NCBI RefSeq assembly: GCF_001194135.2
Contig: NC_068991.1
Span: 28,036,057-28,100,056, forward strand
From: Octopus bimaculoides
Lineage: Eukaryota
DNA length: 64,000 bases
Direction: 5' to 3'
Part shown: in pieces, positions 1 through 39,794 of the stretch
Layout of the letters: every line of letters begins with the position of its first letter
Numbering within the stretch: position 1 is the stretch's first letter
The notes under the pieces: model-generated
The model's database searches: none
What the model saw: the letters and a program-made list of their open reading frames with translations, nothing else
What the model was told of the DNA's origin: nothing
Position numbers and translations under genes: made by a program

Positions 1-200
1 CACATAATTTTCTTATGGTTTCTTAAACATTCACTTGAACAAAACTGTACAAATCCAAATATATGGTACCCTAGGCATAAACACCTACATGAACTTCTAA
101 CTTGTTGTCTCTTGAGGTCTCTGGGTGAGACTTGGATCCAACTTGTACAGATGCAAAACAAAAGTCAAACATAAAATAATAATAATAATAATAATAATGA
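1..200 (+). mobile_element. 3' UTR of an R4/Dong-like non-LTR element ending in (AAT)n
   Basis: gaggtctctgggtgagacttgga block resembles R4/Dong 3' UTRs (recognition) and is followed by an (AAT)n tail. Confidence 0.5.
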
Positions 201-272
201 TAATAATAATAAGATCATCAAAAAAAATACCTTAGGAATGAGAACCCAGGGTTGGGTTCAAAATTCTATCAG

Positions 273-318
273 GACACCTGATGAAGGCTGGAGAGTAAAT
301 CAGCCGAAACCTTGTGGT
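273..318 (+). ncRNA. Hammerhead ribozyme motif, family 1, degenerate copy
   Basis: GACAC-CTGATGA-A-GGCTG(10 nt)CAGCC-GAAAC-CTT-GTGGT; stem III G16.2->C and one stem I mismatch relative to the other copies. Confidence 0.7.
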
Positions 319-433
319 AACAGCAAACAAGATGAGGACACATATCCGTCCAATGTAAATAATATATATACACAAGTATATTATTATTATTATTATTATT
401 ATGATTATTATTATTATTATTATTATTATTATT

Positions 434-4780: not shown

Positions 4781-4883
<103 letters not shown>

Positions 4884-7510: not shown

Positions 7511-7562
<52 letters not shown>

Positions 7563-7895: not shown

Positions 7896-7933
<38 letters not shown>

Positions 7934-8726: not shown

Positions 8727-8769
<43 letters not shown>

Positions 8770-9614: not shown

Positions 9615-9648
<34 letters not shown>

Positions 9649-10784: not shown

Positions 10785-11473
10785 GTAAATATATTTTATC
10801 TTTTATCTTTTCCTTGCTTCAGTCATTGAAGTGTGACCATGTTTGGGCACTGTCATGAAGGTTTTAGTCAAACAAATCACACCCAGTACTTATTATTTTT
10901 ATTTGTTTAAGCCTGATTCTTGTTCTATTGGTTTCTTTTGCAAAATTGCCAAGTTATGAAGACTTGCACAAACCAGCATTAGTTGTGCAGTGGTGGTGCA
11001 AGTCAAGCACACACACCCACACAAACATGACGGGCTTCTCTGAACTTCCTTCTAGAAAATTCACTCATAAAGCTTTGGTCAGTCTAGCGCTATAACAGAA
11101 GACACCTTAGGTGCCGTGCAGTGGGATTGAACCTAGGAAGCAAAATAGGAAGTAAAATTGGAAGCAAAATGTTTACTACACAGCCATATCTGGGCCTATA
11201 ACTCTATTTTAAAGCAAAATTAAGTCATTATTGGTATCTATAATTATTTTCCTTATGTAATTAATAATTACATAAACGATAAATAACTGACACTAGGTTG
11301 TTATCTTGTTCTCTAGATAGTCATTTTGATAGGTAAATTTGGAAGTATATTTTTGTCTCCAAGGGCAATATCAGGAAATATGGCAAACATACAAGAATTA
11401 TAATTACACTTTTATCAAATGAAAAGAAAACTTGTTAAAAGAAAAATATTTATTACCATAATATAAATTTTAA

Positions 11474-11618
11474 TTATTTACATTATTTACATTCGACGGA
11501 TATTTGTCCTCATCTTGTTTGTTGCTAACACAACGTTTCAGCTGATATAACCTCCAGCTTTCATCAGGTGTCTTGGGGAAATTTCGAACCTGGGTTCTCA
11601 TTCCTAACGTATTTTCGA

Positions 11619-11661
<43 letters not shown>

Positions 11662-12224
11662 GAGTGAGAGAGCAGTGCATGTCATGAAAGTGACACTGGG
11701 GTAAAATATACGAAGTCCGTTATACCCATCATGACTACCCATCTGATAAGGGTACACCAGGCACATGCATCACAACCATATGTGCGCGACATAGTGATTT
11801 CATATCAAGATATAACAGTGCATGACCTCGCAGGTGGGACCCAGTTAGAATTTTCTTCAAGTCAAATAGCCCATCCTGCTCAAAACGTCCCTGAATAAGG
11901 TTTGTTTAAGGATGTTGAGCAAAACACCCATGTTTCCAAAGGTGAATTATTCAAACCCAAAAGAATTCCTCTCAGCACATGGCTATGATGCTCCCCCACT
12001 ACCTCTGCTCATGATCAGAGATGCACATATCATCAGCCACCAAGGGACATGCTCAACTGGTTAAGGTGAAACAACTGACAAGCAAATCTGTGGTATTAAG
12101 CAGAATATTTGCTGTAGGCCATCTTTTTATACCAAGACAAAACAATGTACATGATAACACTTCCAATCAGTTAAGATCAGAAGCCATGAGAACCACTGCT
12201 TGGTACTGCATCCGGGCAGTGTTA

Positions 12225-12260
<36 letters not shown>

Positions 12261-12332
12261 TCACTGTCTGGAATCGAAATCAGAATCTTGGGGTTAGTAG
12301 CCCGCGCACTTAACCACTATGCCATATGCCCA
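11474..12332 (-). mobile_element. Hammerhead-bearing tRNA-SINE interrupted in its internal (AAT)n by an unclassified insert (about 11663-12225)
   Basis: tRNA-like head about 12255-12332 and ribozyme/tail 11474-11625 match the uninterrupted copy at 29441-29733. Confidence 0.8.
11527..11572 (-). ncRNA. Minimal type I hammerhead ribozyme motif, family 1
   Basis: minus strand GACAC-CUGAUGA-A-AGCUG(10)CAGCU-GAAAC-GUU^GUGUU; palindromic AACGUU stem III; stem I GACAC/GUGUU. Confidence 0.82.
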
Positions 12333-12730
12333 TGGGCATATGGCATAGTGGTTAAGAACCTAGTTGTCTACCAAAGCAACTCTTAGGTGACTCTGGCACT
12401 TAATATATTGAAGTGGTATCTCTGGCCCTTCATATATACTACAGTGGTAGGGATGGCAGTGGTATTAGTGATGGTGGCGGGGTGAAGTTATTATAATTTC
12501 TTAGAAAAAATGAAACAAAAGTAACCCAGAAATTTTGTTATTGTATTCCATTGCTAAGTCACCATACTTTATATTGAATATTTAAAGCAAAATATATCTA
12601 ACCATCATCGATCATCATCATCGATCATCATCATCGATCATCATCATCATCACAAATGTCGTTAATGTCATTTTTATTATCACTATTTTAATGTGATTTT
12701 CTTTTCCATTGTAAACTAAATAGATGCTAG

Positions 12731-14677: not shown

Positions 14678-14824
<147 letters not shown>

Positions 14825-17665: not shown

Positions 17666-18190
17666 GATGGAGAGTATGATATTGGAAATTCTAATTACAC
17701 AATATTTTCCCCATTACAAAGAGGGAGAAATCATTAAAATTCCTCTAAAGTATAATCAAAAAATTACTATTTCTAAAATGTAAGATCAACAGTTTTAGAT
17801 TATCAATTTAGTTTAACAATTTGGAGAAGGAAGTTGATGATCCTTCATAAACCATGTTAGGCAGCACCATTTTTTATGAGATTCATTTTCTATAAGGTCC
17901 AAAAATCAGAAGTATATTATTACAAGAAATTCTGTAAAGCAAACACCAAATATTTGAATCTCAATAATAAAAGCAAAGTATGGGTATTCCAGAAAGTGCT
18001 AAAGCATTTTATAAGGATTCAAAAGATCATTTGATATATTCAGTGTAAAAAAATGATGAGTGTCATTGTTATCTGTTCCACTGGTCTGAATACAGATTGT
18101 ATAGGGACCATCATAGAGTTGTTTTTAGAACTTCCTTTTTGATATCTGACATCTTGTTCATTCATAAAATTCATTTCTACTTTCCAACAG

Positions 18191-21992: not shown

Positions 21993-22029
<37 letters not shown>

Positions 22030-22377
22030 CATTATATAGTCAGCTCATGATGGAAACATGTAAACATTTGCTCTCATCCAATAGCCAAAGATAAACATCA
22101 TTGAGCATTGTTAGCCGTTTCATGGGTGACATCTTGGTATCTCTACATGCTACAATTATCTTACATAAATGAAGGATCATTATAATGTTTACTACATAGA
22201 TATACCATTTGCAGTTTATACATGTTTGCATTATTGTATTACATGGATGTATAATTTCTTAACATAGCTGAAGCTACGACCCATTATATTCTGTGTTGGT
22301 ACATTTGCAAAAGTGAACAAAATTAGTGATACATTTTCCATTTATTGCCTTGTTGTTGAAAATTTCACATTATTTGT

Positions 22378-22597
22378 NNNNNNNNNNNNNNNNNNNNNNN
22401 NNNNNNNNNNNNNNNNNNNNNNNNNNNNNNNNNNNNNNNNNNNNNNNNNNNNNNNNNNNNNNNNNNNNNNNNNNNNNNNNNNNNNNNNNNNNNNNNNNNN
22501 NNNNNNNNNNNNNNNNNNNNNNNNNNNNNNNNNNNNNNNNNNNNNNNNNNNNNNNNNNNNNNNNNNNNNNNNNNNNNNNNNNNNNNNNNNNNNNNNN
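22378..22597 (+). other. N-gap inferred to hide the copy B YWD...FKH exon
   Basis: left flank 22033-22377 matches 1753-2097 and right flank from about 22760 matches 2704 onward, the sequences bracketing this exon in copy A. Confidence 0.75.
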
Positions 22598-24433
22598 TTG
22601 TATTAACCTTGAAAGGATGAACAGCAAAGCTGATCTTGACAGGATTTGAAAACAGAATGTAAAGAGACATAACTAAATACTATGAGGCACTCGGACAATT
22701 CTGCCAAACCACCATGGAAAGAAACTAATATAAAATATATTTTGGGAATTCTCATCTCATCTCATCTTCCTCGTCCACTTAATCTTGGGATGGTCGTAGG
22801 GACAGAGTCTTCAAGCATGCCTTTCATTGGGTCCTGTTATAATCAACTGCCTCTAATCAATCAGGCTGTATCTCTAAGCAAGATCAACTGAATTCAATGT
22901 GAAAACTTTCAGATGATAAACTTTTAAGTATAAATGTATAGATATTTATATTAATAGGTCCAAATTACAGAACACAAATGAGTGATTTGTATAAGTTGGA
23001 CCTATTAATATAAATATCTATATATTTATACTTAAAAAAAATTCCTTGTCTGAAAGTTTCCACCTTTTGCTTTCTCTTCTTTGGCATGTATACAAAGATG
23101 CATATTTTGTATTTCATACCCAAACTATTATATTTAATATATTTTTATATATCTAATATAATTAATGCATTTAATTTGTTTATCTGTATAATTGACTCTA
23201 TATCTGCTCAACTTGGTCTCTCTTACAGTCATTCTTTACCTTGTGAAATCGATCCCCTGTAGAGACATTGGAAACTAAGTTTCCATTGGAAGCTAACTAG
23301 CTTTTCATGTGTCACTAGCAGGAGACAGTTTGCCTCCGTGAGACCCTGAACTCGAAAGATACTTTTTATATGCCACTATTATGGGTACCAGTTATGTGAC
23401 ACCTGCATCAACCTTGGCAATGATTTCACTTGGTTTGACAGGTCTTCTCAAGTACAGCATATCCCCAAAGACTTTGGTCACAAGTCATTGCCTCTGTGGG
23501 ACCCATGTCTTCCTAGGTCTACCTCTACCACAGGTTCCCTCTACAGTTAGACATTGGCACTTGTTTACACAGCTGCCATTGTCTATATGCATCACATAAC
23601 CATACCAGCACAGTCATCTCTCTTGTACACATCTGATGCCTCTTATGCCTGGCTTTCCTCTCAAGATGTTTGCACTCTCTTGATCATGCATGCTGACTTG
23701 AAGATCTAGTGAAGCATGCTGCCTTCATTTCTTTCAAGCCTATGCATGTCCTTGGCTGTCACAGCTGTGTAGCATAGCTGTTTGCACACAGGCATCATGC
23801 AATCTGTCTTTCACATTGAGGGGAAGGCCTTTTGTTGTCAGCAGGGGTAGGAGCTCTCTGAACTTTACCCAGCCTATTCTTATTCTCACAGCTGCACTCT
23901 CAGAGCATCCACCTCCATTATTAACTTGGTCACCTATATAGCAGAAGCTATCAGCTAACTCTAGCTTACCCACCTGGCAATTGATGGAGACTATTTTCTG
24001 TATATTTTCAATGCTTATTGTACCTGCCCATTTTCCACCAATAAAAGCCATTTTCCCTGTTGACAACCTTCCTCTGATATTGCTGTACCTCTTATGTGTC
24101 CATAGCTTACATCAGATATATCTTATGGAGTTTCTACCTACGCTTTTTCTACAGATCAAGCAGGGCCATCTACCTGAAGGGATTTGTGATTTGTCTGCCT
24201 TCCTACTTACTAAGAATTATATGTCTATATATGTATCTTTGATCTTTTACTGGTTTCAATCATCAGACTGCAGACATGTTGAGGTGCCACCTTCAAGAAT
24301 TTTTAATTGAATGAATTAACTCCAGTGTTTTTCGAAAAACCTGGTACTTATTCTATAGGTGTATTTTACTGAACAACTAAGTCACAGTGACGTAAACACA
24401 CCACAATCGGTTGTCAAGTAGTGCTGAGGACAA

Positions 24434-24507
<74 letters not shown>

Positions 24508-24528
24508 ACACATACACACACTCACATG

Positions 24529-24561
<33 letters not shown>

Positions 24562-24563
<2 letters not shown>

Positions 24564-25835
24564 CAATATAAGCAACAGGATATCAAGAGGTGATGCAGTA
24601 CGACCATTACAAGGAGCTCCATTTAATTGAACAATGCAATCCTCAGCTGCATGAATAAATAGAATCTTTTAATCAGTTGGACACATTAATATAATTTTAC
24701 TCAAATTAATTCTAGTGTCATATATGATGTGAACTTACCCACTAGTATTATATATAAGTTATATATATTTTCTTATTATTCTCTATAATTTCTTACTATT
24801 GTGTTTTCTTATTTTGATATCTTTACCTATTAACCTTTTATCTCTTCTAAGTTATTAAATTTTTTAAAGGGAAATATAAACTTTCAAGCTACTTAAGTCT
24901 AGAAGAGATGATTATAACATATCCATAATAAAGTCCATATATTTGTGCATAGTTGCATGTGTGCACATAGTTAAATATATGTATGTATCTGTGCACAACT
25001 TATTTTTCCAGTTTTTTCTCTCATTCTTAGCTTATAACTAATATAAAGATAGTATGATTTATCATCCCAGTATTCCATAAGTAAATACCCAGAGCAATCT
25101 TTATAGAAACCACCTTATAAGTAAATAATTAAGTACAGGTGTGAATATTAAACTAATTCTATGTAATCTTCCCTTTCTAATGTTGAAAATTGGTATATAT
25201 TCACAGTTTATCTATTCTGGTTATAATATCATTTTTAATAATCTTAAATTTTATCTTCATACAACATAACAATATTGTTTATATACATTCATCCATTGTA
25301 CCCTGTGATAATTTCCTCTGTATTAACATCATAGGTTTTATTAGCGTCTTGCCCCTTTCACTGGTAATTAACATCTTGATTTAGGGTCTTCCCCTACCCA
25401 GCCTCCTTATAGACAATTACTTATACGTTTCCTAAAATCTCAACATGATTTATGACCATACCCAACTATAAAATGTCAACTCACTCTGTCTATCCATTCT
25501 AAACTGATACTGTCCTCTAGCCTTAGATTTGATAGTTGATTAAAAAAAAAAAGACTAATAAATTAAAAGTGAAACACAATCATTTACAAGCTATGACCCT
25601 AACAAACTTCATATAGCCCTTAGAAGTGTAATATATTCTGAGTTACATTAGTAGCAACATGGACTTTCTCCCTCTTCTTGCTTTATTAGAGAATTTGAGT
25701 AAAATTATATTAATGTGTCCAACTGAGGATAGCCCTGCATTTAAATTGATGTAATGATTGCATTGTTCAATTAAATGGAGTTGCTTGAAACGGTCGTACT
25801 GCATCACGTCTTGATATCCTGTTGCTTATTTTGAT
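24562..25835. mobile_element. Non-autonomous TIR element (about 140-bp imperfect TIRs), unit B only
   Basis: ataagcaacaggatatcaagaggtgatgcagtacgacc... mirrored by ...ggtcgtactgcatcacgtcttgatatcctgttgcttat; no long ORF inside. Confidence 0.8.
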
Positions 25836-26103
25836 TTTATTCACCTTACTTTGAGTTGTACAGATAATACTGCACTGTCTTGGTGCTCCAACTTAAGTAC
25901 CTAATTCAACTGAATCTCAATTATTTATGTATATATATACATATATGATGAACTTCTTTCAGTTTCCAACTACCAAATCTACTCAAAGTTTTGATCAGTC
26001 AGAGGCTTTAGCAGAAGACACTTGTCTAAGTTGCTATGCAGTCAGACTAAACCCGGAACCATGTGCTTGCGAAGCAAGCTCCTTATCACAAGCAACACCT
26101 GTA

Positions 26104-26134
<31 letters not shown>

Positions 26135-26518
26135 ATGCACTCACTAATAATTTGTTGTAGTTATTAGGTCAAAAGGAGGTTAGCTAATGAAGGTGTTGAT
26201 GATGGTGGTGTATTCTTTTCTAAGTAGTAAGGAATTGACTCTGAACAATTTATTTTTTTGCATGGACTGAAATCTAAATCAAATACAGTTTGATTTAATA
26301 CTTGCACATTTGTGCAAGTAATTGGCATTGAACAATGTCATTTTTACTGCCACCACTAACATAATTACTAACTACAAACAAACAACAATCATGACAGGCA
26401 ACAACCAAAAATCATCAGCATTGACACCATCATCAATTTTTCATTGTCATCTCATTTTTTTTCATTTTTTTCTGGCTTTTTTCTTTATCTCCCATTCTCT
26501 GTCTCTCTATCTCTTTCC

Positions 26519-26597
<79 letters not shown>

Positions 26598-26979
26598 TCT
26601 ACTCCCTCTTCTTATATCTCTCATGAGCTACTTCCCTTAACATGATGCAGGAAGTAGGTAGGAACATATTATTGTACTAATGCATAGATGATTATGCCCT
26701 GTCATATAAAATCTGCCTTATCCCATATTATGACATTGCAATAAAGAGTACATACATCAGAAGAATACTAAACCATTCAAATACTAATTCAATGAGTCGA
26801 GTAGCTTAGTTGATCAAACACTTTCACAGTCATAAAATCAGATTGAGATGTATTTACTATTTACTTTTAATCTCATTATAAAGCGATAATTAAATGATTA
26901 CTGGAAAGAAAAGAAATTTGGCTCAGTCATGACAATACAAAATTTGACAGTTAAAGTTATTTCGAATATTTTTCTTTAG

Positions 26980-27116
26980 GGAAATTTAGTGTTGGAAAAA
27001 ATATGGGTCTTAGATACCAAAACTGGACAGATGTTGTAGGCGGCTGGTATGCGGATATAAAAGAATTCACCTATAATGCATCAAATGCATTTCAGAAAGT
27101 AGGACATTACACACAG
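26980..27116 (+). CDS. Copy B CAP exon xKFSVGKNMGLRYQNWTDVVGGWYADIKEFTYNASNAFQKVGHYTQ
   Basis: same length (137 nt), phase and splice sites as 5789-5925; GHYTQ. Confidence 0.94.
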
Positions 27117-27822
27117 GTAAGAATAATCTATTTTATACATCCAAATTTTTTAAAATATCTGAGTATTGTGGAAAACGAATAGTTGTGTTCTAGATAAAAA
27201 AAGATGTCACAATTTAGTAAAAGATAAAAAGAGAACAGACCAGAAGTTAGTAAGAAATTCTAGAAGAAAAAGACTTTATAGTTTTTCAGGATCAAATATT
27301 TTACTCAGTGAAATCTGATTTGTAATTAGAATTTTCAGTATTTCTAAAGTGATTTTTCCAACTTATATACATATTGTTGCTATTATGTTAAACTGTTGTA
27401 TGTCCAAATTTGGCAATATGCATATTTTTCAATATTTATTTTTGCTTGCAATAGCCAGTTCTTTTGGTCAAACTATCATATTTCCAGCTGTTCCAGATGT
27501 CAAGGTATCAAAAATTGTCAAAGTGTAGTGCAACAGTTTTGCTATGAAATGGTGAAACTATTGTTTTGTTTTCAGAAAAAGAAACGTTTTAGACTTACAA
27601 CACCTTTGCATAATAGCAACAATATACATCTTATTGACACCCTACAAATTCTCATAGATTTAGAATTATTTTAACTTCATAATGAAAGATCTAATGAAGT
27701 ATAGCAATGTAAATGTTGTGAACATGTTGAAAGTGAGTATGTGGGGTTTTTTAGTTCCCTGGGCTAAATTGGATGTAAAAGATGGTAGATATAAAATTTT
27801 AAGTATATTTTCATTTTTACAG

Positions 27823-27911
27823 ATAGTCTGGGCAAACACTGCTACTATTGGTTGTGGATTCGCTGATTGCAAAGGTCAAGGAAAAATGTTTGTATGTAAC
27901 TATGGTCCAGC
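27823..27911 (+). CDS. Copy B CAP exon IVWANTATIGCGFADCKGQGKMFVCNYGPA
   Basis: tttacag/gtaagt, 89 nt, paralog of 6645-6733. Confidence 0.94.
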
Positions 27912-28049
27912 GTAAGTCAATGCTTTCAATCTCTTTATAATATTGCATTTTGGTGGTTGGCCAAAATGTATGTTTGGTTTTTCTTGATATCAAATTTCAG
28001 GCACTCCAATAAGTAGCTACTTTAAGCCTGTCTCTTGCACATCTCCACT

Positions 28050-29010
28050 CATTAGAGACTTGATGCCTCGGTTTACTTTCTCACAAGTCAGCAATCAGAC
28101 AGGTTGTATTTTGTATGCTTGAAAATGGAGGACTGAACTGAACATTATCAACACTTCATGTATTTTTATTTTAAGAAATGGCAACAAAAGCAGTAGAATT
28201 GTTCAGGAAGATATGTGCTGTGTATGGAAAGGATGCAGTTACTGAATGTATGTGTCAGGAATGGTTTCCAAGTATGCATTCCAGACATTTCGTGGCTCAA
28301 AATGCACCTCATTCTGGCCAGCCTACTGAGATTTACAAGCAATATTAACCCCCATTATATGGCCAGGATGATTGCAGATAATCCCTAAATATCCAAACTG
28401 AGTCTTCAATACAAACCAGCTGCATCAACTTGGTGATGTGAGCAGGTTCAGTGTTTGGGTCCCACATCAATTGAATGAAAGTAAACTTGGTCAATGGATT
28501 TCCATCGGTGATTCTTGGTAGAAATATAAAGAAAATTATCCTTTTTCGACGGGAATGGTATCACAGAATATAAAATGGATCATCTATAACAATGTGAAGT
28601 GCAAAAGATCATTAGGGAAGTCCAGTGAACCACCACAAATAACCACTAAAGCAGGAGTTCACACACAAAAAGTTATGCTTTCAGTTTAGTGAGACTGGAA
28701 GAGCATTATCGTTTACTAGCTTCTTCCCATATACAGGACCAACAATAATTTGGATGTGTACTGTGCCAATGGACAAATTAAATACAGCAATCCACTTGAA
28801 ATATCTACCACTTGTAATTGTAAGTGCATTGTCTTTCATTACAACGAAGTCAGATCACAGTCTTCTTTGCAGACATACCAGAAATTATTGGGTCTTGGTT
28901 GGGAAGTTCTGCTCTCTCCATATTTGCCACCCTTGCAACTTCTAATTTCCACCTGCTTTGGTTTCTTCGTTGAGTGGAAAAACCTTCAACTCTTCAGTTG
29001 TGATGAAGTG
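28050..29010 (+). mobile_element. Mariner (DD34D-like) transposase relic; internally deleted remnant at about 6880-7075
   Basis: HFMYFYFKK..RKICAVYGKDAVTE..EWF, KWIIYNN, KVMLSV, LGWEVL..PY.LPP motifs. Confidence 0.85.
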
Positions 29011-29440
29011 TATTCCAGTCATGACAAGTTAGCCCTTTTTAACTATTGTACACATCACTACACCTAATGTGTCTTTCCTTGACGGGTGTGATTTGAGGGA
29101 GATTTGAGCACTACATCTAGCAAGCCCAGTGAACACACAGTTATTGATTTTATGTTGGTAATAAATCTATTTGTCACATAAACTTAAGGAAAATTTACAG
29201 ACACATGAAATGAATTATAATGTTTTTTTATAATGTTAATATCTTTGGAGATGAAATATTTCTTGATATTTATATCTATCATACCAGTTAGCTGACAAAA
29301 TTGTTATCATGCTGGGCAAAATGCTTAGCAGCATTTCATCCATCATTTTGTTCGTAATTCAAATTCTACTGAGGCCAACATAGCATTTCATCCTTTCAGG
29401 GTTGATAAAATAAGTACCAGTTGAACACTGTGGTTGATAT

Positions 29441-29602
29441 TATTTACATTATTTACATTTGATGGATATTTGTCCTCATCTTGTTTGTTGTTAACACAAC
29501 GTTTCGGCTGATATACCCTCCAGCCTTCTTCAGGTGTCTTGGGGAAATTTCGAATCTGGTTTCTCATTCCTAAGGTATTTTTTGATGTTGTTATTATTAT
29601 TA

Positions 29603-29637
<35 letters not shown>

Positions 29638-29733
29638 GTTCAGGATACTGCTTGGAATCGAACTCGGAATCTTGGGGTTAGTAGCCTGTGCTCTTAACCA
29701 CTACGCCATATGCCTGTGTGCATATAGAACTTT
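29441..29733 (-). mobile_element. tRNA-derived SINE carrying a hammerhead ribozyme, with 14-bp TSD
   Basis: A-box TGGCGTAGTGG, B-box GAGTTCGATTCC, (AAT)n, hammerhead, (AATGTAAAT) tail; TSD actgtggttgatat at 29427-29440 and 29734-29747. Confidence 0.85.
29493..29538 (-). ncRNA. Minimal type I hammerhead ribozyme motif, family 1
   Basis: minus strand GACAC-CUGAAGA-A-GGCUG(10)CAGCC-GAAAC-GUU^GUGUU; all core nucleotides present. Confidence 0.83.
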
Positions 29734-30100
29734 ACTGTGGTTGATATAATTGATTTACCCGCTTCCTCAAAATTGCTGGCCTCAAGCCAAACTTTGAAGT
29801 TAATATTCATCCAAAGTTTCAATCATTTTGATCTTTAACCTCATCTATCTCTATTTCTGAATAGGTACCTGAATGTTATTAAAAGGTATCTAAGCCTCTA
29901 TACACACCCACATCTAAAATAAATCTTAGGGACATCCAAAATTAGAGTTCACCAAACTAACAAATCCTCTATAACTACCAGCAGGTACATTTTCTGTGTC
30001 CTCTTTCTCATCTCCAATCACTTACAAGTTACAGGGATTTAAACCCAACAACATCAGTTACCGAATAGTTACCAACACAGGCACAAAAACACACACGCAC

Positions 30101-30142
<42 letters not shown>

Positions 30143-30206
30143 ACATAGGCACAGGAGTGGCTGTGTNNNNNNNNNNCACACACACACACACAAACACACA
30201 CATAGG

Positions 30207-30552
30207 CACAGGAGTGGCTGTGTGGTAAGAAGCTTACTTCCCAACCACATGGTTCTAGGGTCAGTCCCACTGCCTGGCACCTTGGGTGTCTTCTGCTATA
30301 GCCTCAGGGCGACCAAAGCCTTCTGTGTGGATTTGGTAGATGGAAACTGAAAGAAGCCCATTGTATGTATGTTTGTGTGTGTGTGTGTGTGTGTGTGACA
30401 CACACACACACACACACACACACACAACAGGCTTCTTTCTCTTTCCATCTACCAATTCCACTCACAAGGCTTTGATCAGCTTGAGGCTATAGCAGAAGAC
30501 ACTTACCATACATGGCACGTAGTGGGACTGAATCCAGAATTATGTGGTTCCT
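30207..30552. mobile_element. Two copies of an abundant tRNA/CORE-like SINE in inverted orientation (+ 30207-30370, - 30425-30552)
   Basis: ggcacaggagtggctgtgtggtaag...accttggg...gaccaaagcc; other copies about 9661-9820(-), 10820-11200(-), 25955-26100(-), 34478-34855(+), 57040-57412(+). Confidence 0.8.
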
Positions 30553-30797
30553 CTGTTGGATCAACTGGTACTTCTATTACAGCAACTTGTTCGTCTAGTG
30601 GTTCTTTTAAACCAACTGGTCCTTCTACCTGGGAGAAAATTCTTATTTTCTTGTATAATTTTTGAGTGCTTATTTCAGGTATATGAAATAGAAAATCACA
30701 AGATATTGTCTTATATTCAATATTACTATACTGAATATTACCTTCTCTCAACTTTTAGAAAATTAATTATTTTAAATGTTTTTTTTTTATTTTTCAG

Positions 30798-30862
30798 AGG
30801 AAACGCTCATGACACTTATAACCTACCATATAAATCATGTAAAGGACCTACAAAACTCATTG
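30798..30862 (+). CDS. Copy B exon GNAHDTYNLPYKSCKGPTKLI
   Basis: ttttcag/gtgaga, 65 nt, paralog of 10386-10450. Confidence 0.92.
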
Positions 30863-31094
30863 GTGAGAAGATATTTTAAAAAGCACACTTCTTTGTCCGT
30901 CAATAAGAAATACATAAACTAGCGATTAGAGTTCTGCATCATTGAATTAAGTGATTTCCTAAGCATTGTGTCTTATGTGCTAATGATTTTAATGGCTCAA
31001 TACCTAACAAATTCATTATAATTTAAATTTGATTTCTGACATAATTCAATAATATAATATATTAATTCATGAAAACTTTCTCATTTACTTTTAG

Positions 31095-31196
31095 ATTGTA
31101 AAGGAAGGGTTTGTCGGAATTGGAGTACAAGGATTGGTGATGGTTGTAAGTGTAAATGTTTGAAGAGCCGGATCTATCATGGACCACAATGTAGAA
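31095..31196 (+). CDS. Copy B EGF-like exon DCKGRVCRNWSTRIGDGCKCKCLKSRIYHGPQCR
   Basis: cttttag/gtaaat, 102 nt, six Cys conserved with copy A. Confidence 0.9.
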
Positions 31197-31308
31197 GTAA
31201 ATATATTTTATCTTTTATCTTTTCCTTTTTGTCTTTTCCTCTCTCTCTCTCTCTTTCTCTCTCTCGCTCTCTTTCTCACTCACTTTCCTTCTCTCTCTCC
31301 CTCTCTCG

Positions 31309-31339
<31 letters not shown>

Positions 31340-33317
31340 ATCCTCCTCTGTACTATGTAAAGCAAGACTGGAGGATCAATCAGTTACCCAATCCCATATT
31401 TGCTTCTTGTCAAGCCAAGAAAGGCAAGATGTCTAAGTAGTGGCCACCCTCTGACAGATTTATGGTAGAGCTTGAAGTAGTGGTGACCCGCTGGACTACA
31501 TCCCTGCTCATTGCTATTAGGACAGAGGTGCTATCCACAAGTGCGAGCCCGTGAGTCAGAACAGCTGTTCCAGCATGTCTCCTTCACCATCCCCGGGGCA
31601 ATGCCTCTCGGATTTTGTCCACCAGGAGCATGAAGCAGACTGACAAATCATTTTAGTTATAGTTGTTTTATTGACATTAAGTACAAGACACCTGTTTCTA
31701 TCTCTGTTACACTCTAAAATTTTATCATCTGACACAAGATCACCTCCTCCAATGCCCCCTCCCTTCTCAAAGGATCTTTCTCTTGCAAGTTACTTGGTGA
31801 CCCAGCCAGTGCTGATGCCACTTCAAAAGCGTCCAGTCCACACTGTAATGTGGTTATCATTTGGAAGGGCAACCATCCAACTGTAAAATCCATGCCAAAA
31901 CTAATCTTGCCATGTAAAAAGCACTCAGTCGTGTCTGCTGAGAGGTTGGTGCTAGGAAGGGCATCCAGCCATAAAAGCCATGCCAAAACAGACACAGAAG
32001 TTTGGTGCATTCTTCTGCCTGGCCAGCTTCTGTCAAATTGCCCAACCCATGCCAGCATGGAAGGCAGAAATTAAACAATAATGATGGTGATGAAAACAGA
32101 ATAAAGATACTTGAATGATATAGGAATATATGAAAGACAGCTAATACCAAAAGCTATTGCTAACTAATGAACTACAGGTAATCAACATTTATATTAGCTA
32201 TAATATCAGATTACCTGATATAGTTCATGTATATCAGGTAACCTAACTGCCTCAGATTACGTAAATGGTTGTCTGACAAACTCACAATAATAATTTAGCT
32301 GTCTACCAAAAACAACTCTTAGATATCTCTGGCATTTAATATACTGAAGCAATATCTTTGGTCCCTCATATATACTACAGTAGGAGGGATGGCAGTGGTG
32401 ATGGTGGTGGTGGTGGTGGTGGTGGTGGTGGTGGTGGTGATGGTGGGGTTATTATAATTTCTTAGAAAAAATAAAAAAGTCACCAGAAATTTTGTTATTA
32501 TACTCTACTGATAAGTCCCAATATCTTAGAATGGATATTTAAAGCAAAACATATCTAATCATCATCATCATCATCAGTACCACTTGTCACTTTTATTGTC
32601 ACTATTTTAATGTGCTTTTCTTTGCCATTGTAGACTGCATAGATGCTAGTATGATGCTTAATACTATTTCAATTAAGCATCCATTAAGCAAAACATCTTA
32701 AGAACTGTCTCTACTAAAACTTCTCACATCTTCTTCACTCTTCTCTTACCTATGTCATCATCTTCTACCAGTGCACACTACATTTTGTATACAAGTCATT
32801 GACTAGAACTAGAACATTTGTCTCTGCTGCTTACATCAGCTGATGTCTTCAATGTCCAGATAGTCTCAACACAGCAGTGCACCATTTTTCATGTGGATTA
32901 ATGTTACACATTCCATACACCATGCATGTGTCATTTCTTTCCAACCTCTGTAATAGATCTTCTACAGTCACTGTCCATGTCCCTATTCCATAACATTTGG
33001 TATCACACATCTCGCACCACCATTATGCAGTCTAACTCTACACAAAGAATCAGAATGAACACGTTCACCCAACTTCTTTGTCACCTTCCTTATACTAACA
33101 ACTATTCTTTCATCAAATCCAGCTCTTTTGTTATTTATGTCACATATGCATTTATCACACCTAAAGGGACTCTACCTACATTTTTTTTTTTTTTGTATTT
33201 CTCGCTGTTTACATTATATGTACATTGAACTTTCTCACTTAATTTGAAATAATACCACTTCTGAGATGAAAGTGAGATTTTGCTTTCCCCATGAAACAAA
33301 TTCTTGATTTTTTACAG

Positions 33318-33442
33318 TGAACTGTGCTCGAGGCAAAGAAAATGCTCATTGTGGTGGATATTTCACAAAAGAAGATTGTATTGAGTATTCCAATGTTCCA
33401 TTCATATGTCCTGAGACGTGTAACCTGTGTCCAAGTGAGTAA
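33318..33442 (+). CDS. Copy B ShKT exon [41 protein letters not shown]
   Basis: tttacag acceptor, six Cys, TAA 33440-33442, AATAAA 33852-33857 after the gap. Confidence 0.9.
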
Positions 33443-35812
33443 ANNNNNNNNNNNNNNNNNNNNNNNNNNNNNNNNNNNNNNNNNNNNNNNNNNNNNNNNN
33501 NNNNNNNNNNNNNNNNNNNNNNNNNNNNNNNNNNNNNNNNNNNNNNNNNNNNNNNNNNNNNNNNNNNNNNNNNNNNNNNNNNNNNNNNNNNNNNNNNNNN
33601 NNNNNNNNNNNNNNNNNNNNNNNNNNNNNNNNNNNNNNNNNNNNNNNNNNNNNNNNNNNNNNNNNNNNNNNNNNNNNNNNNNNNNNNNNNNNNNNNNNNN
33701 NNNNNNNNNNNNNNNNNNNNNNNNNNNNNNNNNNNNNNNNNNNNNNNNNNNNNNNNNNNNNNNNNNNNNNNNNNNNNNNNNNNNNNNNNNNNNNNNNNNN
33801 NNNNNNNNNCAATGTTAACAGGTCATAGGATTGTTCAACCATTGTTAGGACAATAAATGTATTTGTATAAAGATAAACTAGGAGTTGGTATATAGAAGTA
33901 AGTTACAAAAGGTAACTACAGGTAAATAGAAATAGGTTTCCAGAGATTAATAGGCAAGTAGGCAAACATTTAGATGTATGATTGTCGTCAATGTATTTGT
34001 GAAAAAGGCATATTTATAATATATGCTTTTTACAACTATGGCCATCTTACTAGTGTTGGTGCTATGAAAAAGTACTCAGTGCACTCTGTAAAGTGGTTGG
34101 CATTTGAAACCATGCCAAAGCAGACATTAGTGCAAGATGCAGTCTACTGACCTGCTGGATCCTGTGAAATTGTTCAACCCATGCCAGCATAGAAGATGCA
34201 CTTTAAAGGATGATTATACATATTTAAATGTAAAAAGAAGCAGGGAAAAAGTTGCAAGTTGCAAACACTATATCTGCTGTAGCTGTATAGCTGTTCTAAC
34301 CTTTACACTTTGGTGCAGTGGTTAGCACAACATTTGACTGCCTAACATAACAGACTTAAAGAGAGTAGCTACAAAAACAAATTAGAGACTTGTCAGTGAG
34401 GATCTCAGTCCACACAGTATTTAAAGTATACTATTATATGTTATATAATATAGAAGATGATATATATTATTTCAGAGTCATAGCCGTGTGGTAAGAAGCT
34501 TACTTCCCAACTTCATGGTTCTGGGTTCAGTTCCACTGCATGGCACCTTGGGCAAGTGTCTTTTACTACAGCTTCAGGTTGACCAAAGCCTAACAGAAAG
34601 AATCCTATTATATATTTGTGTGTGTTTGTCCTTGTGTCTATGTTTGTCCCCCACCACCAGTTGACAATTGATGTTAATATGTTTACATTTCCATAATTTG
34701 GCAGTTTGGCAAAAGGGACCAATAAAAAAAGTACTAGGCTTTAAAAAAGTAAATAAGTACTGGTCTTGATTCATTTGACTAAAAGATTTTCAAGGTGTTG
34801 CCCCACCATTGCCCTAGTCAAATGACTGAAACAAGTAAGAGATAAAAGATAAAAGAATAGTATAGAAAATGAAAAGTATAATTCATTAACAAATTACTTT
34901 TATGACAGGAACCAAAATGTCCTGACGACATTTCTGATATTTTGATACATATAGGAATATTTGAAATATAAAAATTGAAATTCATGTAAAAGTATATGAA
35001 AGAATTCCAGTTGTTTGTGGCTGTTTCTAAAGTTATATGCCAAAGATATTGCCTGTATAATTAACAAAGTAGATAAGCAAAGAAATAAATCTGCCATTAG
35101 CAGAGTCTATAAGGAGAGGGACTTATTCATAGTTATTTGAATGTCTACTAATGTTTATATAAAGCAAAAAAGCAACAAAAATATTGCAAAACTTTTGGCT
35201 CAACAAACGATGTATCTATATGTATATATATNNNNNNNNNNNNNNNNNNNNNNNNNNNNNNNNNNNNNNNNNNNNNNNNNNNNNNNNNNNNNNNNNNNNN
35301 NNNNNNNNNNNNNNNNNNNNNNNNNNNNNNNNNNNNNNNNNNNNNNNNNNNNNNNNNNNNNNNNNNNNNNNNNNNNNNNNNNNNNNNNNNNNNNNNNNNN
35401 NNNNNNNNNNNNNNNNNNNNNNNNNNNNNNNNNNNNNNNNNNNNNNNNNNNNNNNNNNNNNNNNNNNNNNNNNNNNNNNNNNNNNNNNNNNNNNNNNNNN
35501 NNNNNNNNNNNNATATATATATATATATATATATACATACATACAATAGGAACCATTTAAATAATTTATTGATAATGTTATCATTATTGCTATCAAAGTT
35601 TAATTATATTTCAACTAGTTATTGTTATCTAAGGGTTCTATCCCAAAGTGGTTATAGTAAAAGTTAATAATAGACAGGTATACCTATATACATACATGTT
35701 TACATGTGTGTGTTTGTGTATACAATATGTAAATTTATAAGTATACATACAAATATGCATATATATATATACATACATGCACGCACACGCAAACACACAC
35801 ACACACACACAT

Positions 35813-38657: not shown

Positions 38658-39794
38658 ATGGCACCAAAGTGGGAGAAGAAAGAATTAAATCTTCTGTTGC
38701 GAGCATGGATAATTGCTAGTGGCGATCCGCCGAACAACATCATCACTACTGCACTGAAGAGCAATGGCTTTCACATAACCACTGATCAGATAGAGCGGAA
38801 GAAGAATGAATTCCTCCGATCCTATACACTCATCAGACCACACATCGACACCCTGGATGTCATAATCGAAAACTATTGTGGAAAGGCTGATAAGGATGGA
38901 GAAGATGAAAAGGAAAAAACACCCGGAAGTCTCTTTNNNNNNNNNNNNNNNNNNNNNNNNNNNNNNNNNNNNNNNNNNNNNNNNNNNNNNNNNNNNNNNN
39001 NNNNNNNNNNNNNNNNNNNNNNNNNNNNNNNNNNNNNNNNNNNNNNNNNNNNNNNNNNNNNNNNNNNNNNNNNNNNNNNNNNNNNNNNNNNNNNNNNNNN
39101 NNNNNNNNNNNNNNNNNNNNNNNNNNNNNNNNNNNNNNNNNNNNNNNNNNNNNNNNNNNNNNNNNNNNNNNNNNNNNNNNNNNNNNNNNNNNNNNNNNNN
39201 NNNNNNNNNNNNNNNNNNNNNNNNNNNNNNNNNNNNNNNNNNNNNNNNNNNNNNNNNNNNNNNNNNNNNNNNNNNNNNNNNCACAAGCATAAAGAAGGAA
39301 AATGTAAAAATGAAACAACTAAAACCGAAACCCCAATCCACCAAACAAAAAGTAGAAAACCCCAAGGAGGATCCAATGCCATCCAAGACCCTACAGGAAA
39401 GAAGAAATTTGGAAGGCACTCAAGAACCTGCAAATTTTACCTGCAAGGCAAATGTTGGCATAGGGAAGACGGCAAAAACTGCCGGTTTGCCCACCCGACA
39501 CCCCACCAAAACTACAAAGGCCTTAATGATAAAAACTTCCTTGAGGAAAGACGACAAATGTCTCCAAGGAAAAATTTCACCAAAGAAGTGCGCTCTTCAG
39601 AGATTATACGCAACGCAGCAGCTGAGCAAGAGTCTTTTCTATACATGGTGCAAAAGATTGTGCTGCAGCTGAACTGGCTACACCAAGCACAAACAAGGAA
39701 CCTTGCCCACCACTGCGCAAGACCACCACAGTCAACAGACATGGGATGGCCTCCCCTAACGCCTGCACAGGCATCACGCCAATATTTTTACTAA
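38658..39794 (+). CDS. LINE ORF1: Myb/SANT-like (trihelix) N-terminus plus C-terminal CCCH zinc finger; middle in N-gap 38937-39281
   Basis: KWEKKELNLLLRAW...ITTALKSNGFHITTDQIERKKNEFLRSY; CKFYLQGKCWHREDGKNCRFAH at 39429-39494; lies directly upstream of and overlaps ORF2. Confidence 0.7.
   Translation: MAPKWEKKELNLLLRAWIIASGDPPNNIITTALKSNGFHITTDQIERKKNEFLRSYTLIRPHIDTLDVIIENYCGKADKDGEDEKEKTPGSLFXXXXXXXXXXXXXXXXXXXXXXXXXXXXXXXXXXXXXXXXXXXXXXXXXXXXXXXXXXXXXXXXXXXXXXXXXXXXXXXXXXXXXXXXXXXXXXXXXXXXXXXXXXXXXXXXXXXHKHKEGKCKNETTKTETPIHQTKSRKPQGGSNAIQDPTGKKKFGRHSRTCKFYLQGKCWHREDGKNCRFAHPTPHQNYKGLNDKNFLEERRQMSPRKNFTKEVRSSEIIRNAAAEQESFLYMVQKIVLQLNWLHQAQTRNLAHHCARPPQSTDMGWPPLTPAQASRQYFY

What the first reader, a model, noticed from the sequence alone, without database searches (positions are those of the whole stretch)
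29441..29733. tRNA-derived SINE that carries a Penelope-type hammerhead ribozyme
Seen on the minus strand, in order: a tRNA-like Pol III head (A-box TGGCGTAGTGG, anticodon-like arm, B-box GAGTTCGATTCC), an (AAT)n spacer, a minimal type I hammerhead (29538-29493: GACAC-CUGAAGA-A-GGCUG/CAGCC-GAAAC-GUU^GUGUU with palindromic AACGUU stem III) and a short AATGTAAAT tail. The whole unit is bounded by a 14-bp TSD inside another SINE, so it moved as one piece, and three copies occur in 30 kb. Established: minimal hammerheads with palindromic stem III that cleave as dimers occur in Penelope-like element terminal repeats, and Schistosoma SMalpha is a tRNA-related repeat with a hammerhead. Inference: a self-cleaving SINE that captured a PLE 3' end and may be mobilised by PLE RT. 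I do not know of such a family being described in cephalopods, but could not check the literature. Caveats: one extra A before stem II and a GUU triplet may lower activity.
Basis: partly seen in the sequence, partly recalled or inferred. Interest (0 to 1): 0.9.

Follow-up and report, generated by a model that had tools for sequence, protein, structure and literature searches.

The report
Octopus SINE carrying a minimal hammerhead
A short octopus jumping element joins a tRNA-like promoter to a tail holding a small hammerhead ribozyme motif of the type found in Penelope-like retrotransposons; it is real and uncommon, but its helper enzyme and self-cleavage remain untested.

Summary
On the minus strand, 29733-29441 is a 293-bp insertion flanked by a perfect 14-bp target-site duplication inside another SINE. 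It has a tRNA-type A box and B box, an (AAT)n run, and a 46-nt motif (29538-29493) that meets every sequence rule of the Penelope-type minimal type I hammerhead. My descriptor found nothing in 300 shuffles of the window or in 860 Mb of random sequence.

Two more copies exist. Copy B (12356-11473) has a head and a module split by a 565-bp insert, with a compensatory G-C to A-U change in helix II. Copy C (171-370) has no head and a decayed motif. A peptide match places the family in Octopus bimaculoides.

The PLE origin of the tail, the PLE partner and catalytic activity were not shown. I could obtain no octopus PLE sequence. Only three copies were available. I found no copy in 65 kb of O. sinensis and Argonauta hians. 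In its RNA context a competing hairpin buries the cleavage site.

The closest precedent is the schistosome SM-alpha/Sj-alpha SINE-like hammerhead elements, so this is a new variant of a known kind. Interest is moderate.

The parts
29734..29747 (-). 5' copy of the 14-bp target-site duplication ATATCAACCACAGT, which is host SINE sequence
   Evidence: Exact repeat located. Host continuity shown against a related SINE.
29715..29733 (-). 19-nt 5' leader AAAGTTCTATATGCACACA lying upstream of the tRNA-like start. It is partly an inverted copy of the head's first bases.
   Evidence: Copy B shows a perfect version of the same feature.
29638..29714 (-). tRNA-like Pol III head, with A box at 29708-29698 and B box at 29665-29654
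   Evidence: One search gives the coordinates, one pattern hit in the window and a shuffle mean of 0.065. No cloverleaf was detected.
29591..29637 (-). Internal (AAT)n microsatellite. It precedes the 3' module in all three copies.
29539..29590 (-). 5' part of the 3' module (CAACATCAAAAAATACCTTAGGAATGAGAAACCAGATTCGAAATTTCCCCAA)
   Evidence: Conserved between copies A, B and C.
29493..29538 (-). Minimal type I hammerhead motif: 5-bp helix I, CUGAAGA, bulged A, 6-bp helix II with an 8-nt loop, GAA, palindromic ACGU, U17. The predicted cut is between 29498 and 29497.
   Evidence: Descriptor hits. Zero hits in shuffles and in 860 Mb of random sequence. The isolated 46-mer folds to helices I and II.
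29487..29500 (-). Competing hairpin GUUGU-GUUA-ACAAC. It pairs U16.1, U17 and the 3' strand of helix I.
   Evidence: Partition-function folding of the 150-nt and 274-nt RNAs. The pairing is kept in copy B.
29441..29492 (-). Post-ribozyme 3' region and the (AATGTAAAT)2 terminus. All copies share this end point.
29427..29440 (-). 3' copy of the 14-bp target-site duplication
11473..12356 (-). Copy B. In order: 24-nt inverted arm (12356-12333); head (12332 to about 12257); (AAT)n; 565-bp unique insert (12225-11661); (AAT)n; 3' module. The hammerhead lies at 11572-11527, where helix II reads AGCUGG/UCAGCU.
   Evidence: The paralogous site near 32288 lacks it.
171..370 (+). Copy C: (AAT)n plus the 3' module, with no head. 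Its decayed hammerhead at 273-318 reads AACCUU in place of the palindrome and GUGGU in helix I.

Best explanation
This is a lineage-restricted octopus SINE of about 290 bp. It has three parts.
1. A decayed tRNA-derived head that keeps Pol III A and B boxes.
2. An internal (AAT)n run.
3. A 3' domain of about 150 nt that contains a genuine Penelope-type minimal type I hammerhead motif and ends in (GTAAATAAT)n.

Proposed mechanism:
- Pol III starts a few bases upstream of the A box.
- It reads through the whole unit, because the sense strand has no T4 run, and stops at a T run in the flank.
- A reverse transcriptase/endonuclease supplied in trans recognises the 3' domain and copies the RNA by target-primed reverse transcription. 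This produces variable-length TSDs, 5' truncation and snap-back 5' junctions.
- I infer that the hammerhead was inherited with a PLE 3' end.
- In a single-copy SINE RNA it acts mainly as a passenger or a recognition structure. Cleavage would be weak and dimer-dependent.

Confidence by step:
- Composite unit that moved as one piece: shown, about 0.85.
- Motif is a true hammerhead-family motif by descent: strongly indicated, about 0.8.
- PLE origin of the tail and PLE partner: inferred, about 0.4-0.5.
- Appreciable self-cleavage in vivo: inferred to be low, about 0.25.
For: Anatomy and the 14-bp TSD are documented. Host SINE continuity across the site is shown.

Copy B supports movement as a unit. 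The head, the module and a 48-nt palindrome are all missing from the paralogous arm of a roughly 13-kb segmental duplication.

Both heads in the window are followed by a module in the same orientation. All three modules are preceded by (AAT)n and stop at the same 3' end. The sense strand of copy A has no T4 run, and the first TTTT lies 31 nt downstream.

The hammerhead meets these criteria:
- CUGANGA and GAAA boxes.
- A G10.1-C11.1 pair.
- A 6-bp helix II and a 5-bp helix I.
- A palindromic 15.1-16.1 segment with no loop 3.
These are the traits listed for PLE min-HHRs in PMC4209133. The descriptor gave 0 of 300 shuffles and 0 hits in 860 Mb of random sequence.

The four differences between copies A and B inside the motif fall on N7, on loop 2 and on a compensatory G-C to A-U pair. 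The isolated 46-mer folds into helices I and II with the core open.

Literature context:
- PLEs are abundant and recently active in octopus (PMC13282606).
- PLE machinery can act in trans, truncates copies at the 5' end and gives variable TSDs (PMC8557442).
- Most min-HHRs are dispersed single motifs.
Against: - No PLE sequence from an octopus could be compared, so the tail-to-PLE link rests only on the motif type.
- No PLE ORF lies near any copy.
- The 3' terminus AAT-GTA-AAT-AAT-GTA-AAT-A is a degenerate (AAT)n, and the element has an internal (AAT)n. That fits a LINE partner with a microsatellite tail equally well.
- With three copies, covariation is not statistically significant: 153 of 500 shuffles did as well.
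- One copy lacks the head and one is interrupted.
- No copy was found in 65 kb sampled from O. sinensis and A. hians, so abundance and age are unknown.
- In the 150-nt and 274-nt RNA contexts, helix I has about 0.04 pairing probability, because a GUUGU-GUUA-ACAAC hairpin competes and buries U17.
- The double-hammerhead dimer is predicted at -22.3 kcal/mol. That is no better than two separate monomers at -24.0.
- Rfam hammerhead models do not hit.
Confidence: 0.5

Rival explanations
1. The composite SINE is the same, but a LINE mobilises it and the hammerhead is an inert fossil. In this reading the element uses a LINE whose 3' end is a (TAA)n/(AAT)n-type microsatellite, such as a Dong/R4-like element. 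The hammerhead-bearing stretch is a PLE-derived or unrelated fragment fixed in the SINE body, with no role in mobility.
For: - The terminus is a degenerate (AAT)n, and an (AAT)n run sits inside the element.
- Dong-R4, CR1, RTE and L1-Tx1 LINEs are the most active LINEs reported in O. vulgaris (PMC13282606).
- A 14-bp TSD, 5' truncation and 5' snap-back junctions are ordinary outcomes of LINE-type TPRT. This point is from my own knowledge.
- Folding does not favour the active hammerhead in context.
Against: - The 3' ends of the two LINEs in the window share nothing with the SINE tail.
- All three copies share a 57-nt non-microsatellite region after the ribozyme, and the motif keeps pairing through a compensatory change. 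That argues for a specific 3' domain rather than a bare microsatellite tail.
- That Dong elements end in (TAA)n comes from memory and was not checked here.
Confidence: 0.28
2. Two separate elements lie side by side. An ordinary tRNA SINE with an (AAT)n tail was later hit by an independent short hammerhead-bearing PLE derivative (a solo pLTR or 3' fragment) that targets microsatellites.
For: - Copy C has a module with no head.
- In copy B, 565 bp separate the head from the module.
- PLEs show insertion bias for microsatellites (PMC8557442).
- A TSD made by the first SINE would still flank a later insertion into its tail.
Against: - In all three copies (AAT)n lies only on the 5' side of the module, and the module's 3' end abuts unrelated flank. 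An insertion into a microsatellite would leave repeat on both sides.
- Both heads in the window carry a module in the same orientation, and no head-only copy exists.
- The whole of copy B, from head to module, is missing at the paralogous site.
Confidence: 0.1
3. It is a retrozyme-like element. Hammerheads would cut multimeric transcripts into units that circularise and serve as templates, as proposed for metazoan non-LTR retrozymes and for SM-alpha arrays.
For: - It carries a type I hammerhead of the dimer-dependent kind.
- Non-LTR retrozymes are proposed to be non-autonomous PLE derivatives (bioRxiv 10.64898/2026.07.22.740005; PMC7761336).
Against: - The window has no tandem arrangement. The copies are single, dispersed, 11-18 kb apart and in mixed orientation.
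- Copy A has defined linear ends and a TSD.
- The insertion ends do not coincide with the predicted cleavage site.
Confidence: 0.05
4. The resemblance is a coincidence. The 46-nt stretch is not related to hammerheads at all.
For: - No Rfam hammerhead hit even at E<=10.
- Covariation is not significant with three copies.
- Helix I is poorly populated in context.
Against: - Zero descriptor hits in 860 Mb of random sequence and in 300 shuffles.
- The motif shows traits that published work lists as emergent hallmarks of PLE hammerheads.
- The changes between copies A and B are all of tolerated or compensatory kinds.
Confidence: 0.05

Closest known systems
SM-alpha / Sj-alpha SINE-like retroposons of Schistosoma (Ferbeyre et al. 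1998; Laha et al. 2000, as summarised in PMC2770079 and PMC6765202)
   Same: - A tRNA-related, apparently Pol III-driven short non-autonomous retroposon.
- It carries a type I hammerhead downstream of the promoter.
- It is non-coding.
   Different: - SM-alpha has a canonical hammerhead with helix III and loop-loop contacts that cleaves in vitro. This element has the helix III-less minimal variant.
- SM-alpha is typically found in tandem or satellite-like arrays, with a tRNA-Gln-like head. Here the copies are dispersed and single, with a TSD, an internal (AAT)n and a different, undetectable tRNA parent.
- The phylum differs: Mollusca rather than Platyhelminthes.
- Sequence homology was not tested, because no SM-alpha sequence was at hand.
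Minimal type I hammerheads of Penelope-like elements (Cervera & de la Pena 2014, PMC4209133; Lunse et al. 2017, cited but not readable here)
   Same: - Core boxes.
[quoted passage not shown]
- A G10.1-C11.1 pair.
- A long helix II and a short helix I.
- Palindromic 15.x-16.x positions without loop 3.
- Occurrence as dispersed single motifs.
   Different: - The motif is not located in a recognisable pLTR or next to an RT/GIY-YIG ORF.
- It sits downstream of a Pol III head inside a 293-bp unit with its own TSD.
Metazoan non-LTR retrozymes (PMC7761336; bioRxiv 10.64898/2026.07.22.740005)
   Same: - Short non-coding elements with type I hammerheads.
- Proposed to parasitise PLE machinery.
- Reported in a mollusc (mussel).
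   Different: - Retrozymes are tandem repeats that yield circular RNAs, and in invertebrates they usually have a stable helix III.
- This element is a single unit with a tRNA-type promoter and no tandem copies in the window.
Conventional tRNA-derived SINEs of octopus (Ohshima & Okada 1994; tRNA-Core/tRNA-Deu families, PMC8967140)
   Same: - A box and B box head.
- TSD and 5'-truncated copies.
- Nesting within other SINEs.
   Different: - The 3' domain contains a hammerhead motif and an internal (AAT)n run.
- Neither the head nor the body matches the abundant host SINEs in the window.

Membership tests
Hammerhead ribozyme, Penelope-type minimal type I | Conserved core C3-U4-G5-A6-N7-G8-A9 and G12-A13-A14, an A15.1/U16.1 pair, and H17 other than G | tested here: met
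   CUGAAGA in copy A and CUGAUGA in copies B and C; GAA; A15.1...U16.1; U17..
Hammerhead ribozyme, Penelope-type minimal type I | Helix I of 4-5 bp and helix II of at least 4 bp closed by G10.1-C11.1 | tested here: met
   Copies A and B have a 5-bp helix I and a 6-bp helix II. The closing pair is G-C in A and C and A-U in B, a compensatory change. Helix I is broken in copy C..
Hammerhead ribozyme, Penelope-type minimal type I | [quoted passage not shown] | tested here: met
   An A is present in all three DNA copies. The paper's wording is quoted.
Hammerhead ribozyme, Penelope-type minimal type I | No or minimal helix III, with palindromic 15.x-16.x positions that allow a dimeric helix III | tested here: met
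   ACGU is present in copies A and B. Copy C has ACCU and is decayed..
Hammerhead ribozyme, Penelope-type minimal type I | Location in the pLTR or 3' end of an RT/GIY-YIG element | not testable with these tools
   No PLE ORF lies near any copy. Octopus PLE sequences could not be fetched, and the third protein search returned nothing.
Hammerhead ribozyme, Penelope-type minimal type I | Self-cleavage as a dimer | not testable with these tools
   Only folding was possible. The dimer is predicted at -22.3 kcal/mol against -24.0 for two monomers. Helix I probability is about 0.04 in context..
Hammerhead ribozyme (Rfam Hammerhead_1 and related models) | Match to the covariance model | tested here: not met
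   No hit at the gathering threshold or at E<=10. This is expected, because the models require helix III.
tRNA-derived SINE (SINE2) | Internal Pol III A and B boxes at tRNA-like spacing | tested here: met
   Copy A has an 11 of 11 A box, a B box with one mismatch and about 32 nt between them. Copy B keeps the A box, but its B box is degraded.
tRNA-derived SINE (SINE2) | Recognisable tRNA cloverleaf or an identifiable parent tRNA | tested here: not met
   ARAGORN found 0 genes. Rfam tRNA gave no hit at E<=10. A resemblance of the D loop and anticodon loop to tRNA-Ser comes from memory only.
tRNA-derived SINE (SINE2) | Target-site duplication and retroposed dispersed copies, some truncated at the 5' end | tested here: met
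   Copy A has a 14-bp TSD. Copy B is absent from the paralogous site. Copy C is truncated in the (AAT)n run.
tRNA-derived SINE (SINE2) | 3' end shared with an autonomous partner | not testable with these tools
   The LINEs in the window do not share it. No genome-wide TE library was available.
tRNA-derived SINE (SINE2) | High copy number | tested here: inconclusive
   There are three copies in 64 kb, plus one O. bimaculoides gene model translated from a fourth copy (P0001). None was found in 65 kb of O. sinensis and A. hians.
SM-alpha / Sj-alpha | Canonical hammerhead with helix III, and tandem array organisation | tested here: not met
   The motif has no helix III. The copies are dispersed and single.
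Non-LTR retrozyme | Tandem repeats, each unit carrying a hammerhead | tested here: not met
   BLAST of the element against the window shows three dispersed copies and no tandem units.

The most novel reading that the evidence does not exclude
This would be the first SINE with a tRNA-type Pol III head that parasitises Penelope-like elements, giving PLEs a SINE partner in the way LINEs have. In this reading the minimal hammerhead fold is the 3' module that the PLE RT/EN recognises or processes. The family arose recently in the Octopus bimaculoides lineage.
Probability: 0.35. Interest if true: 0.7.

Novelty: new variant of a known kind. Interest (0 to 1): 0.5.

Why it matters
PLEs are the least understood major class of retrotransposons, and the role of their hammerheads is an open question (PMC8557442). 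A short Pol III-driven element that borrowed only the hammerhead-bearing 3' end would help in two ways.
- It would define the minimal cis-requirements for PLE-type retrotransposition.
- It would give a compact reporter for testing whether the hammerhead is needed for cleavage, for RT recognition, or for neither.

It would also extend the schistosome SINE-with-hammerhead design to molluscs, and add a distinct family to the SINE-rich octopus genome.

If a LINE turns out to mobilise it, it is simply a SINE with a fossil ribozyme. That would be of modest interest.

Tried and rejected
**Searches for more copies**
- A protein-level search with the module's open frame found only one O. bimaculoides gene model, P0001. 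Its contig is not on record.
- Look-ups of window ORFs found nothing, so the source assembly is not in the contig collection.
- Sampling via LINE RT homologues gave two O. sinensis loci and one A. hians locus, 65 kb in total. None holds a head, module or hammerhead copy.
- Two metagenome scans and one viral scan with degenerate patterns returned 0.

**Searches for a PLE**
- The one exception is a degenerate RT plus GIY-YIG-like remnant at about 54.4-55.5 kb.
- That remnant, used as the third protein query, returned nothing at E<=1e-5. The threshold may have been too strict.

**Literature**
- No paper in the library describes a hammerhead in a cephalopod SINE or prints these sequences.
- One search was swamped by hammerhead-shark papers.
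- Lunse et al. 2017, Ferbeyre et al. 1998 and Pyatkov et al. 2004 are not held.
- Supplements with PLE consensus sequences are not held.

**Ideas rejected**
- That copies A and B are paralogues of the segmental duplication: their flanks differ, and B is absent from the other arm.
- That the 565-bp insert in copy B is a repeated TE present elsewhere in the window: it is unique there.
- That the SINE at 8143-8260 is the empty paralogous site of copy A: it is a different family, and the true paralogous site falls in an N gap.
Full report
**1. Observation**

I read 29300-29900 on the minus strand.
- A perfect 14-bp direct repeat, ATATCAACCACAGT, lies at 29747-29734 and 29440-29427. It brackets a 293-bp insert at 29733-29441.
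- The insert starts with a 19-nt leader.
- A tRNA-like head follows at 29714-29638. It has an A box TGGCGTAGTGG (29708-29698) and a B box GAGTTCGATTCC (29665-29654).
- Next come an (AAT)n run (29637-29591) and a 52-nt stretch.
- The 46-nt hammerhead motif is at 29538-29493.
- A 33-nt stretch and the terminus (AATGTAAAT)2 follow (29459-29441).

The flanks belong to one of the abundant octopus-type SINEs. A related SINE copy at 8143-8260 reads straight through the equivalent point (...cagt|attgaactggtac...). The repeat is therefore a true target-site duplication.

The motif parses as GACAC / CUGAAGA / A / GGCUGG-AGGGUAUA-UCAGCC / GAA / ACGU / U17 / GUGUU.

**2. Is it more than chance?**

I wrote a descriptor for the Penelope-type minimal hammerhead. 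It requires:
- CUGANGA, then 0-1 extra nucleotide;
- helix II of at least 4 bp;
- GAAA;
- a palindromic 15.1-16.1 segment with 0, 2 or 4 loop bases;
- U16.1 and H17;
- helix I of at least 4 bp.

On both strands of the window it hits only 29538-29493 and 11572-11527. It gave no hits in 300 block shuffles. It gave none in 860 Mb of random sequence with the window's composition.

A relaxed descriptor adds only one weak AT-rich hit at 17809-17759, which I regard as chance. A combined A-box/B-box pattern occurs once in the window, against a shuffle mean of 0.065.

ARAGORN and Rfam find no tRNA or hammerhead, even at E<=10 over a 601-nt stretch. That fits a decayed SINE head and a hammerhead without helix III. 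It also means membership rests on the descriptor and on the published criteria, not on a curated model.

**3. Other copies**

BLAST of the 293-bp unit against the window, followed by reading the hits, gives two further copies.

*Copy B* (minus strand, 12356-11473):
- The head is 87.5% identical to that of copy A.
- (AAT)n follows, then a 565-bp sequence that is unique in the window. Another (AAT)n follows, and then the 3' module at 92.5% identity.
- Its 5' junction is a perfect 48-nt palindrome (arms 12309-12332 and 12333-12356). This is a snap-back copy of the first 24 nt of the head.
- Copy A's leader shows a weak version of the same thing.

*Copy C* (plus strand, 171-370, 84% identity):
- It has (AAT)n and the module but no head.
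- It is either 5'-truncated or head-less.

All three modules are preceded by (AAT)n. All three end at the same point...AATGTAAATAAT, directly against unrelated flank.

**4. Did head and module move together?**

Copy A's TSD encloses both. No leftover (AAT)n lies between the module's end and the 3' TSD.

The window also contains a roughly 13-kb segmental duplication, about 1.7-15.3 kb against 22-34.2 kb, at 82-98% identity.
- Copy B lies in the first arm.
- At the paralogous position in the second arm (about 32288), the left flank aligns up to ...GGTAGACA(A/G)CTA.
- The sequence then continues without the palindrome, head, 565-bp insert or module.
- The first 20 nt or so of B's right flank plausibly resume there.
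- B therefore arrived after the duplication. This is consistent with head and module arriving together, but sequential insertions are not excluded.

The paralogous site of copy A falls in an N gap.

Both heads in the window carry a module downstream in the same orientation, and there is no head-only copy. An insertion of the module into a pre-existing (AAT)n tail would leave repeat on both sides, and none of the three copies shows that.

I conclude that the composite is a single mobile unit, with confidence about 0.85.

**5. Is the hammerhead of the Penelope type?**

Cervera and de la Pena (PMC4209133) describe metazoan PLE hammerheads as follows:
- a short helix I of 4-5 bp;
- a longer than usual helix II;
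- a conserved G10.1-C11.1 pair;
- palindromic 15.2-16.2 positions, with loop 3 absent or palindromic.

They also state that most such motifs are found as single dispersed elements and that in vitro cleavage is low and needs dimers.

Copy A meets every one of these. U17 is allowed by the NUH rule.

Within the 46 nt, copies A and B differ at four positions: N7, one loop-2 base, and G10.1/C11.1 changed to A/U, a compensatory pair. A formal count gives 97% of cells paired and one pair with changes on both sides. With three sequences this is not significant, since 153 of 500 shuffles did as well.

Copy C has lost the palindrome (ACCU) and one helix I pair. A fourth copy is visible only as a translated gene model, P0001. 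Its peptide implies a change in the codon spanning the helix III palindrome, so that copy is probably decayed as well.

**6. Would it cleave?**

- The isolated 46-mer folds exactly into helices I and II with the core open, at -12.0 kcal/mol.
- In the 150-nt module or the 274-nt SINE RNA, helix II keeps a probability of 0.5-0.75.
- Helix I drops to about 0.04. Its 3' strand and U17 are captured by a local hairpin, GUUGU-GUUA-ACAAC (29500-29487), which is also present in copy B.
- The domain-swapped double hammerhead is predicted at -22.3 kcal/mol, against -24.0 for two free monomers.
- Nearest-neighbour models ignore tertiary contacts, so this does not exclude activity.
- It does agree with the literature that such motifs are weak and dimer-dependent.
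- Cleavage in cis would also separate the head from the last 57 nt. That would be counter-productive for a SINE whose full-length copies clearly derive from uncut RNA.

I therefore favour a passenger or recognition role over efficient self-cleavage.

**7. Transcription and integration (inferred)**

- The sense strand of copy A has no run of four or more T. The first TTTT lies 31 nt beyond the element, so a Pol III transcript from the A and B boxes could cover the whole unit.
- Variable TSDs, frequent 5' truncation and complex 5' junctions are reported for PLE insertions. PLE machinery can retrotranspose other RNAs in trans (PMC8557442).
- These features also occur with LINEs, so they do not discriminate between partners.

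**8. The partner**

What I could establish:
- I found no PLE ORF near any copy.
- The only PLE-like trace in the window is a degenerate RT plus GIY-YIG-like remnant at about 55.5-54.4 kb on the minus strand. It lies 25 kb away and is truncated at its 3' side.
- Used as a query, that remnant returned nothing.
- The 3' ends of the two LINEs in the window do not resemble the SINE tail.
- The terminus AAT-GTA-AAT-AAT-GTA-AAT-A is a degenerate (AAT)n. A LINE with a (TAA)n-type tail is therefore a live alternative.
- Octopus genomes hold both active PLEs and active Dong-R4, CR1 and RTE LINEs (PMC13282606).

I put the PLE partner at about 0.4-0.5.

**9. Taxon and distribution**

- The only database protein matching the module's open frame is A0A0L8FV75_OCTBM from Octopus bimaculoides, at 79% identity. 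The window is therefore from that species or a close relative.
- The window's LINE RT has 61-68% identical relatives in O. sinensis and Argonauta hians.
- I fetched 65 kb around three of those genes and found no head, module or hammerhead copy. At the window's density about three copies would be expected. This weakly suggests a lineage-restricted or patchy family.
- Pairwise divergence is 7.5% between A and B and 16% between A and C.
- Using the rate in PMC13282606 (Jukes-Cantor distance 0.065, about 18 My), insertions would date to roughly 10-25 My ago. This is a rough inference.

**10. Comparison with what is known**

- *SM-alpha/Sj-alpha of schistosomes.* This is the closest functional analogue. 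These are tRNA(Gln)-related, apparently Pol III-transcribed SINE-like elements with a hammerhead (PMC2770079; PMC6765202; PMC8490949). They differ in having a canonical, active hammerhead and tandem organisation.
- *PLE minimal hammerheads.* The motif itself belongs with these.
- *Metazoan non-LTR retrozymes.* They are proposed as PLE non-autonomous derivatives, but they are tandem and produce circular RNAs.
- I found no description of a hammerhead-bearing SINE in cephalopods. No paper in the library prints these sequences. The library is incomplete, and Repbase and Dfam could not be consulted.

**11. Verdict**

A composite tRNA-headed SINE with a bona fide PLE-type minimal hammerhead is well supported. 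Capture from a PLE, mobilisation by a PLE RT and self-cleavage are plausible but untested.
- Novelty: a new variant of a known kind.
- Interest: about 0.5.
- Most novel surviving reading: this is the first Pol III-headed SINE that depends on PLEs, with probability about 0.35. If true it would deserve about 0.7.

Noticed in passing
window 1713-15302 versus 21993-34251: There is a segmental duplication of about 13 kb in the same orientation, seen as eight colinear blocks at 82-98% identity with many indels and N gaps. It provided the 'empty site' comparison for copy B.
   Followed up: partly
window about 54400-55500, minus strand: A degenerate reverse-transcriptase remnant (FIQLDISNYYASI ... DITMGS ... 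GLYWGN ... FLDVTMNL..YYKPND..NHP) is followed by a possible GIY-YIG-like stretch (ILDxICNISNYNIGKCDKRK). It looks like a Penelope-like element, perhaps of the 'Hydra' clade. Pfam gave no significant hit and the homologue search returned nothing.
   Followed up: partly
window 38658-42900, plus strand: A LINE with an ORF1-like ORF, an endonuclease domain (Exo_endo_phos_2) and RT (RVT_1), broken by N gaps and a frameshift. The closest relatives, at 61-68% identity, are in Argonauta hians and Octopus sinensis. Its 3' end is A-rich and unrelated to the SINE tail.
   Followed up: partly
window 50843-54320, plus strand: A second LINE fragment: a weak RVT_1 hit at 52728-53093, a C-terminal ORF at 53504-53824 and a 3' UTR reaching about 54320.
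   Followed up: no
window 12309-12356: A perfect 48-nt palindrome at the 5' junction of copy B, formed by an inverted copy of the first 24 nt of the SINE head. It suggests snap-back synthesis at the end of reverse transcription. Copy A has a weak 8-nt version at 29733-29715.
   Followed up: partly
window 11661-12225, minus strand: A 565-bp sequence splits the (AAT)n run of copy B. It is unique in the window and starts with a 14-nt inverted repeat (12151-12164 and 12215-12228). It contains T runs that would stop Pol III. Its origin is unknown: it could be a nested insertion or part of a longer variant of the element.
   Followed up: partly
window 29442-29567 (minus), 11476-11597 (minus), 238-702 (plus): The 3' module is open in one reading frame in all three copies (MRNQIRNFPKTPEEGWRVYQPKRCV...). 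The same frame is annotated as a 51-aa 'uncharacterized protein' in O. bimaculoides (A0A0L8FV75). This is most likely a spurious gene model laid over a SINE copy.
   Followed up: partly
window 29487-29500, minus strand: The hairpin GUUGU-GUUA-ACAAC overlaps the predicted cleavage site and competes with helix I. It is kept in copy B with a U-G pair. It could act as a switch that masks the ribozyme, or it could be part of a 3' recognition structure.
   Followed up: partly
window 17759-17809, minus strand: The relaxed descriptor gives one AT-rich hammerhead-like hit with a U3-A8 core variant and 3-bp helix I. It is probably chance.
   Followed up: no
L001 15450-15590, minus strand (O. sinensis): An unrelated tRNA-derived SINE whose first 22 nt resemble this element's head (GGCACATGGCTTAGTGGTTAAGG...) but whose body is different. 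Several octopus SINE families may share a similar tRNA parent.
   Followed up: no
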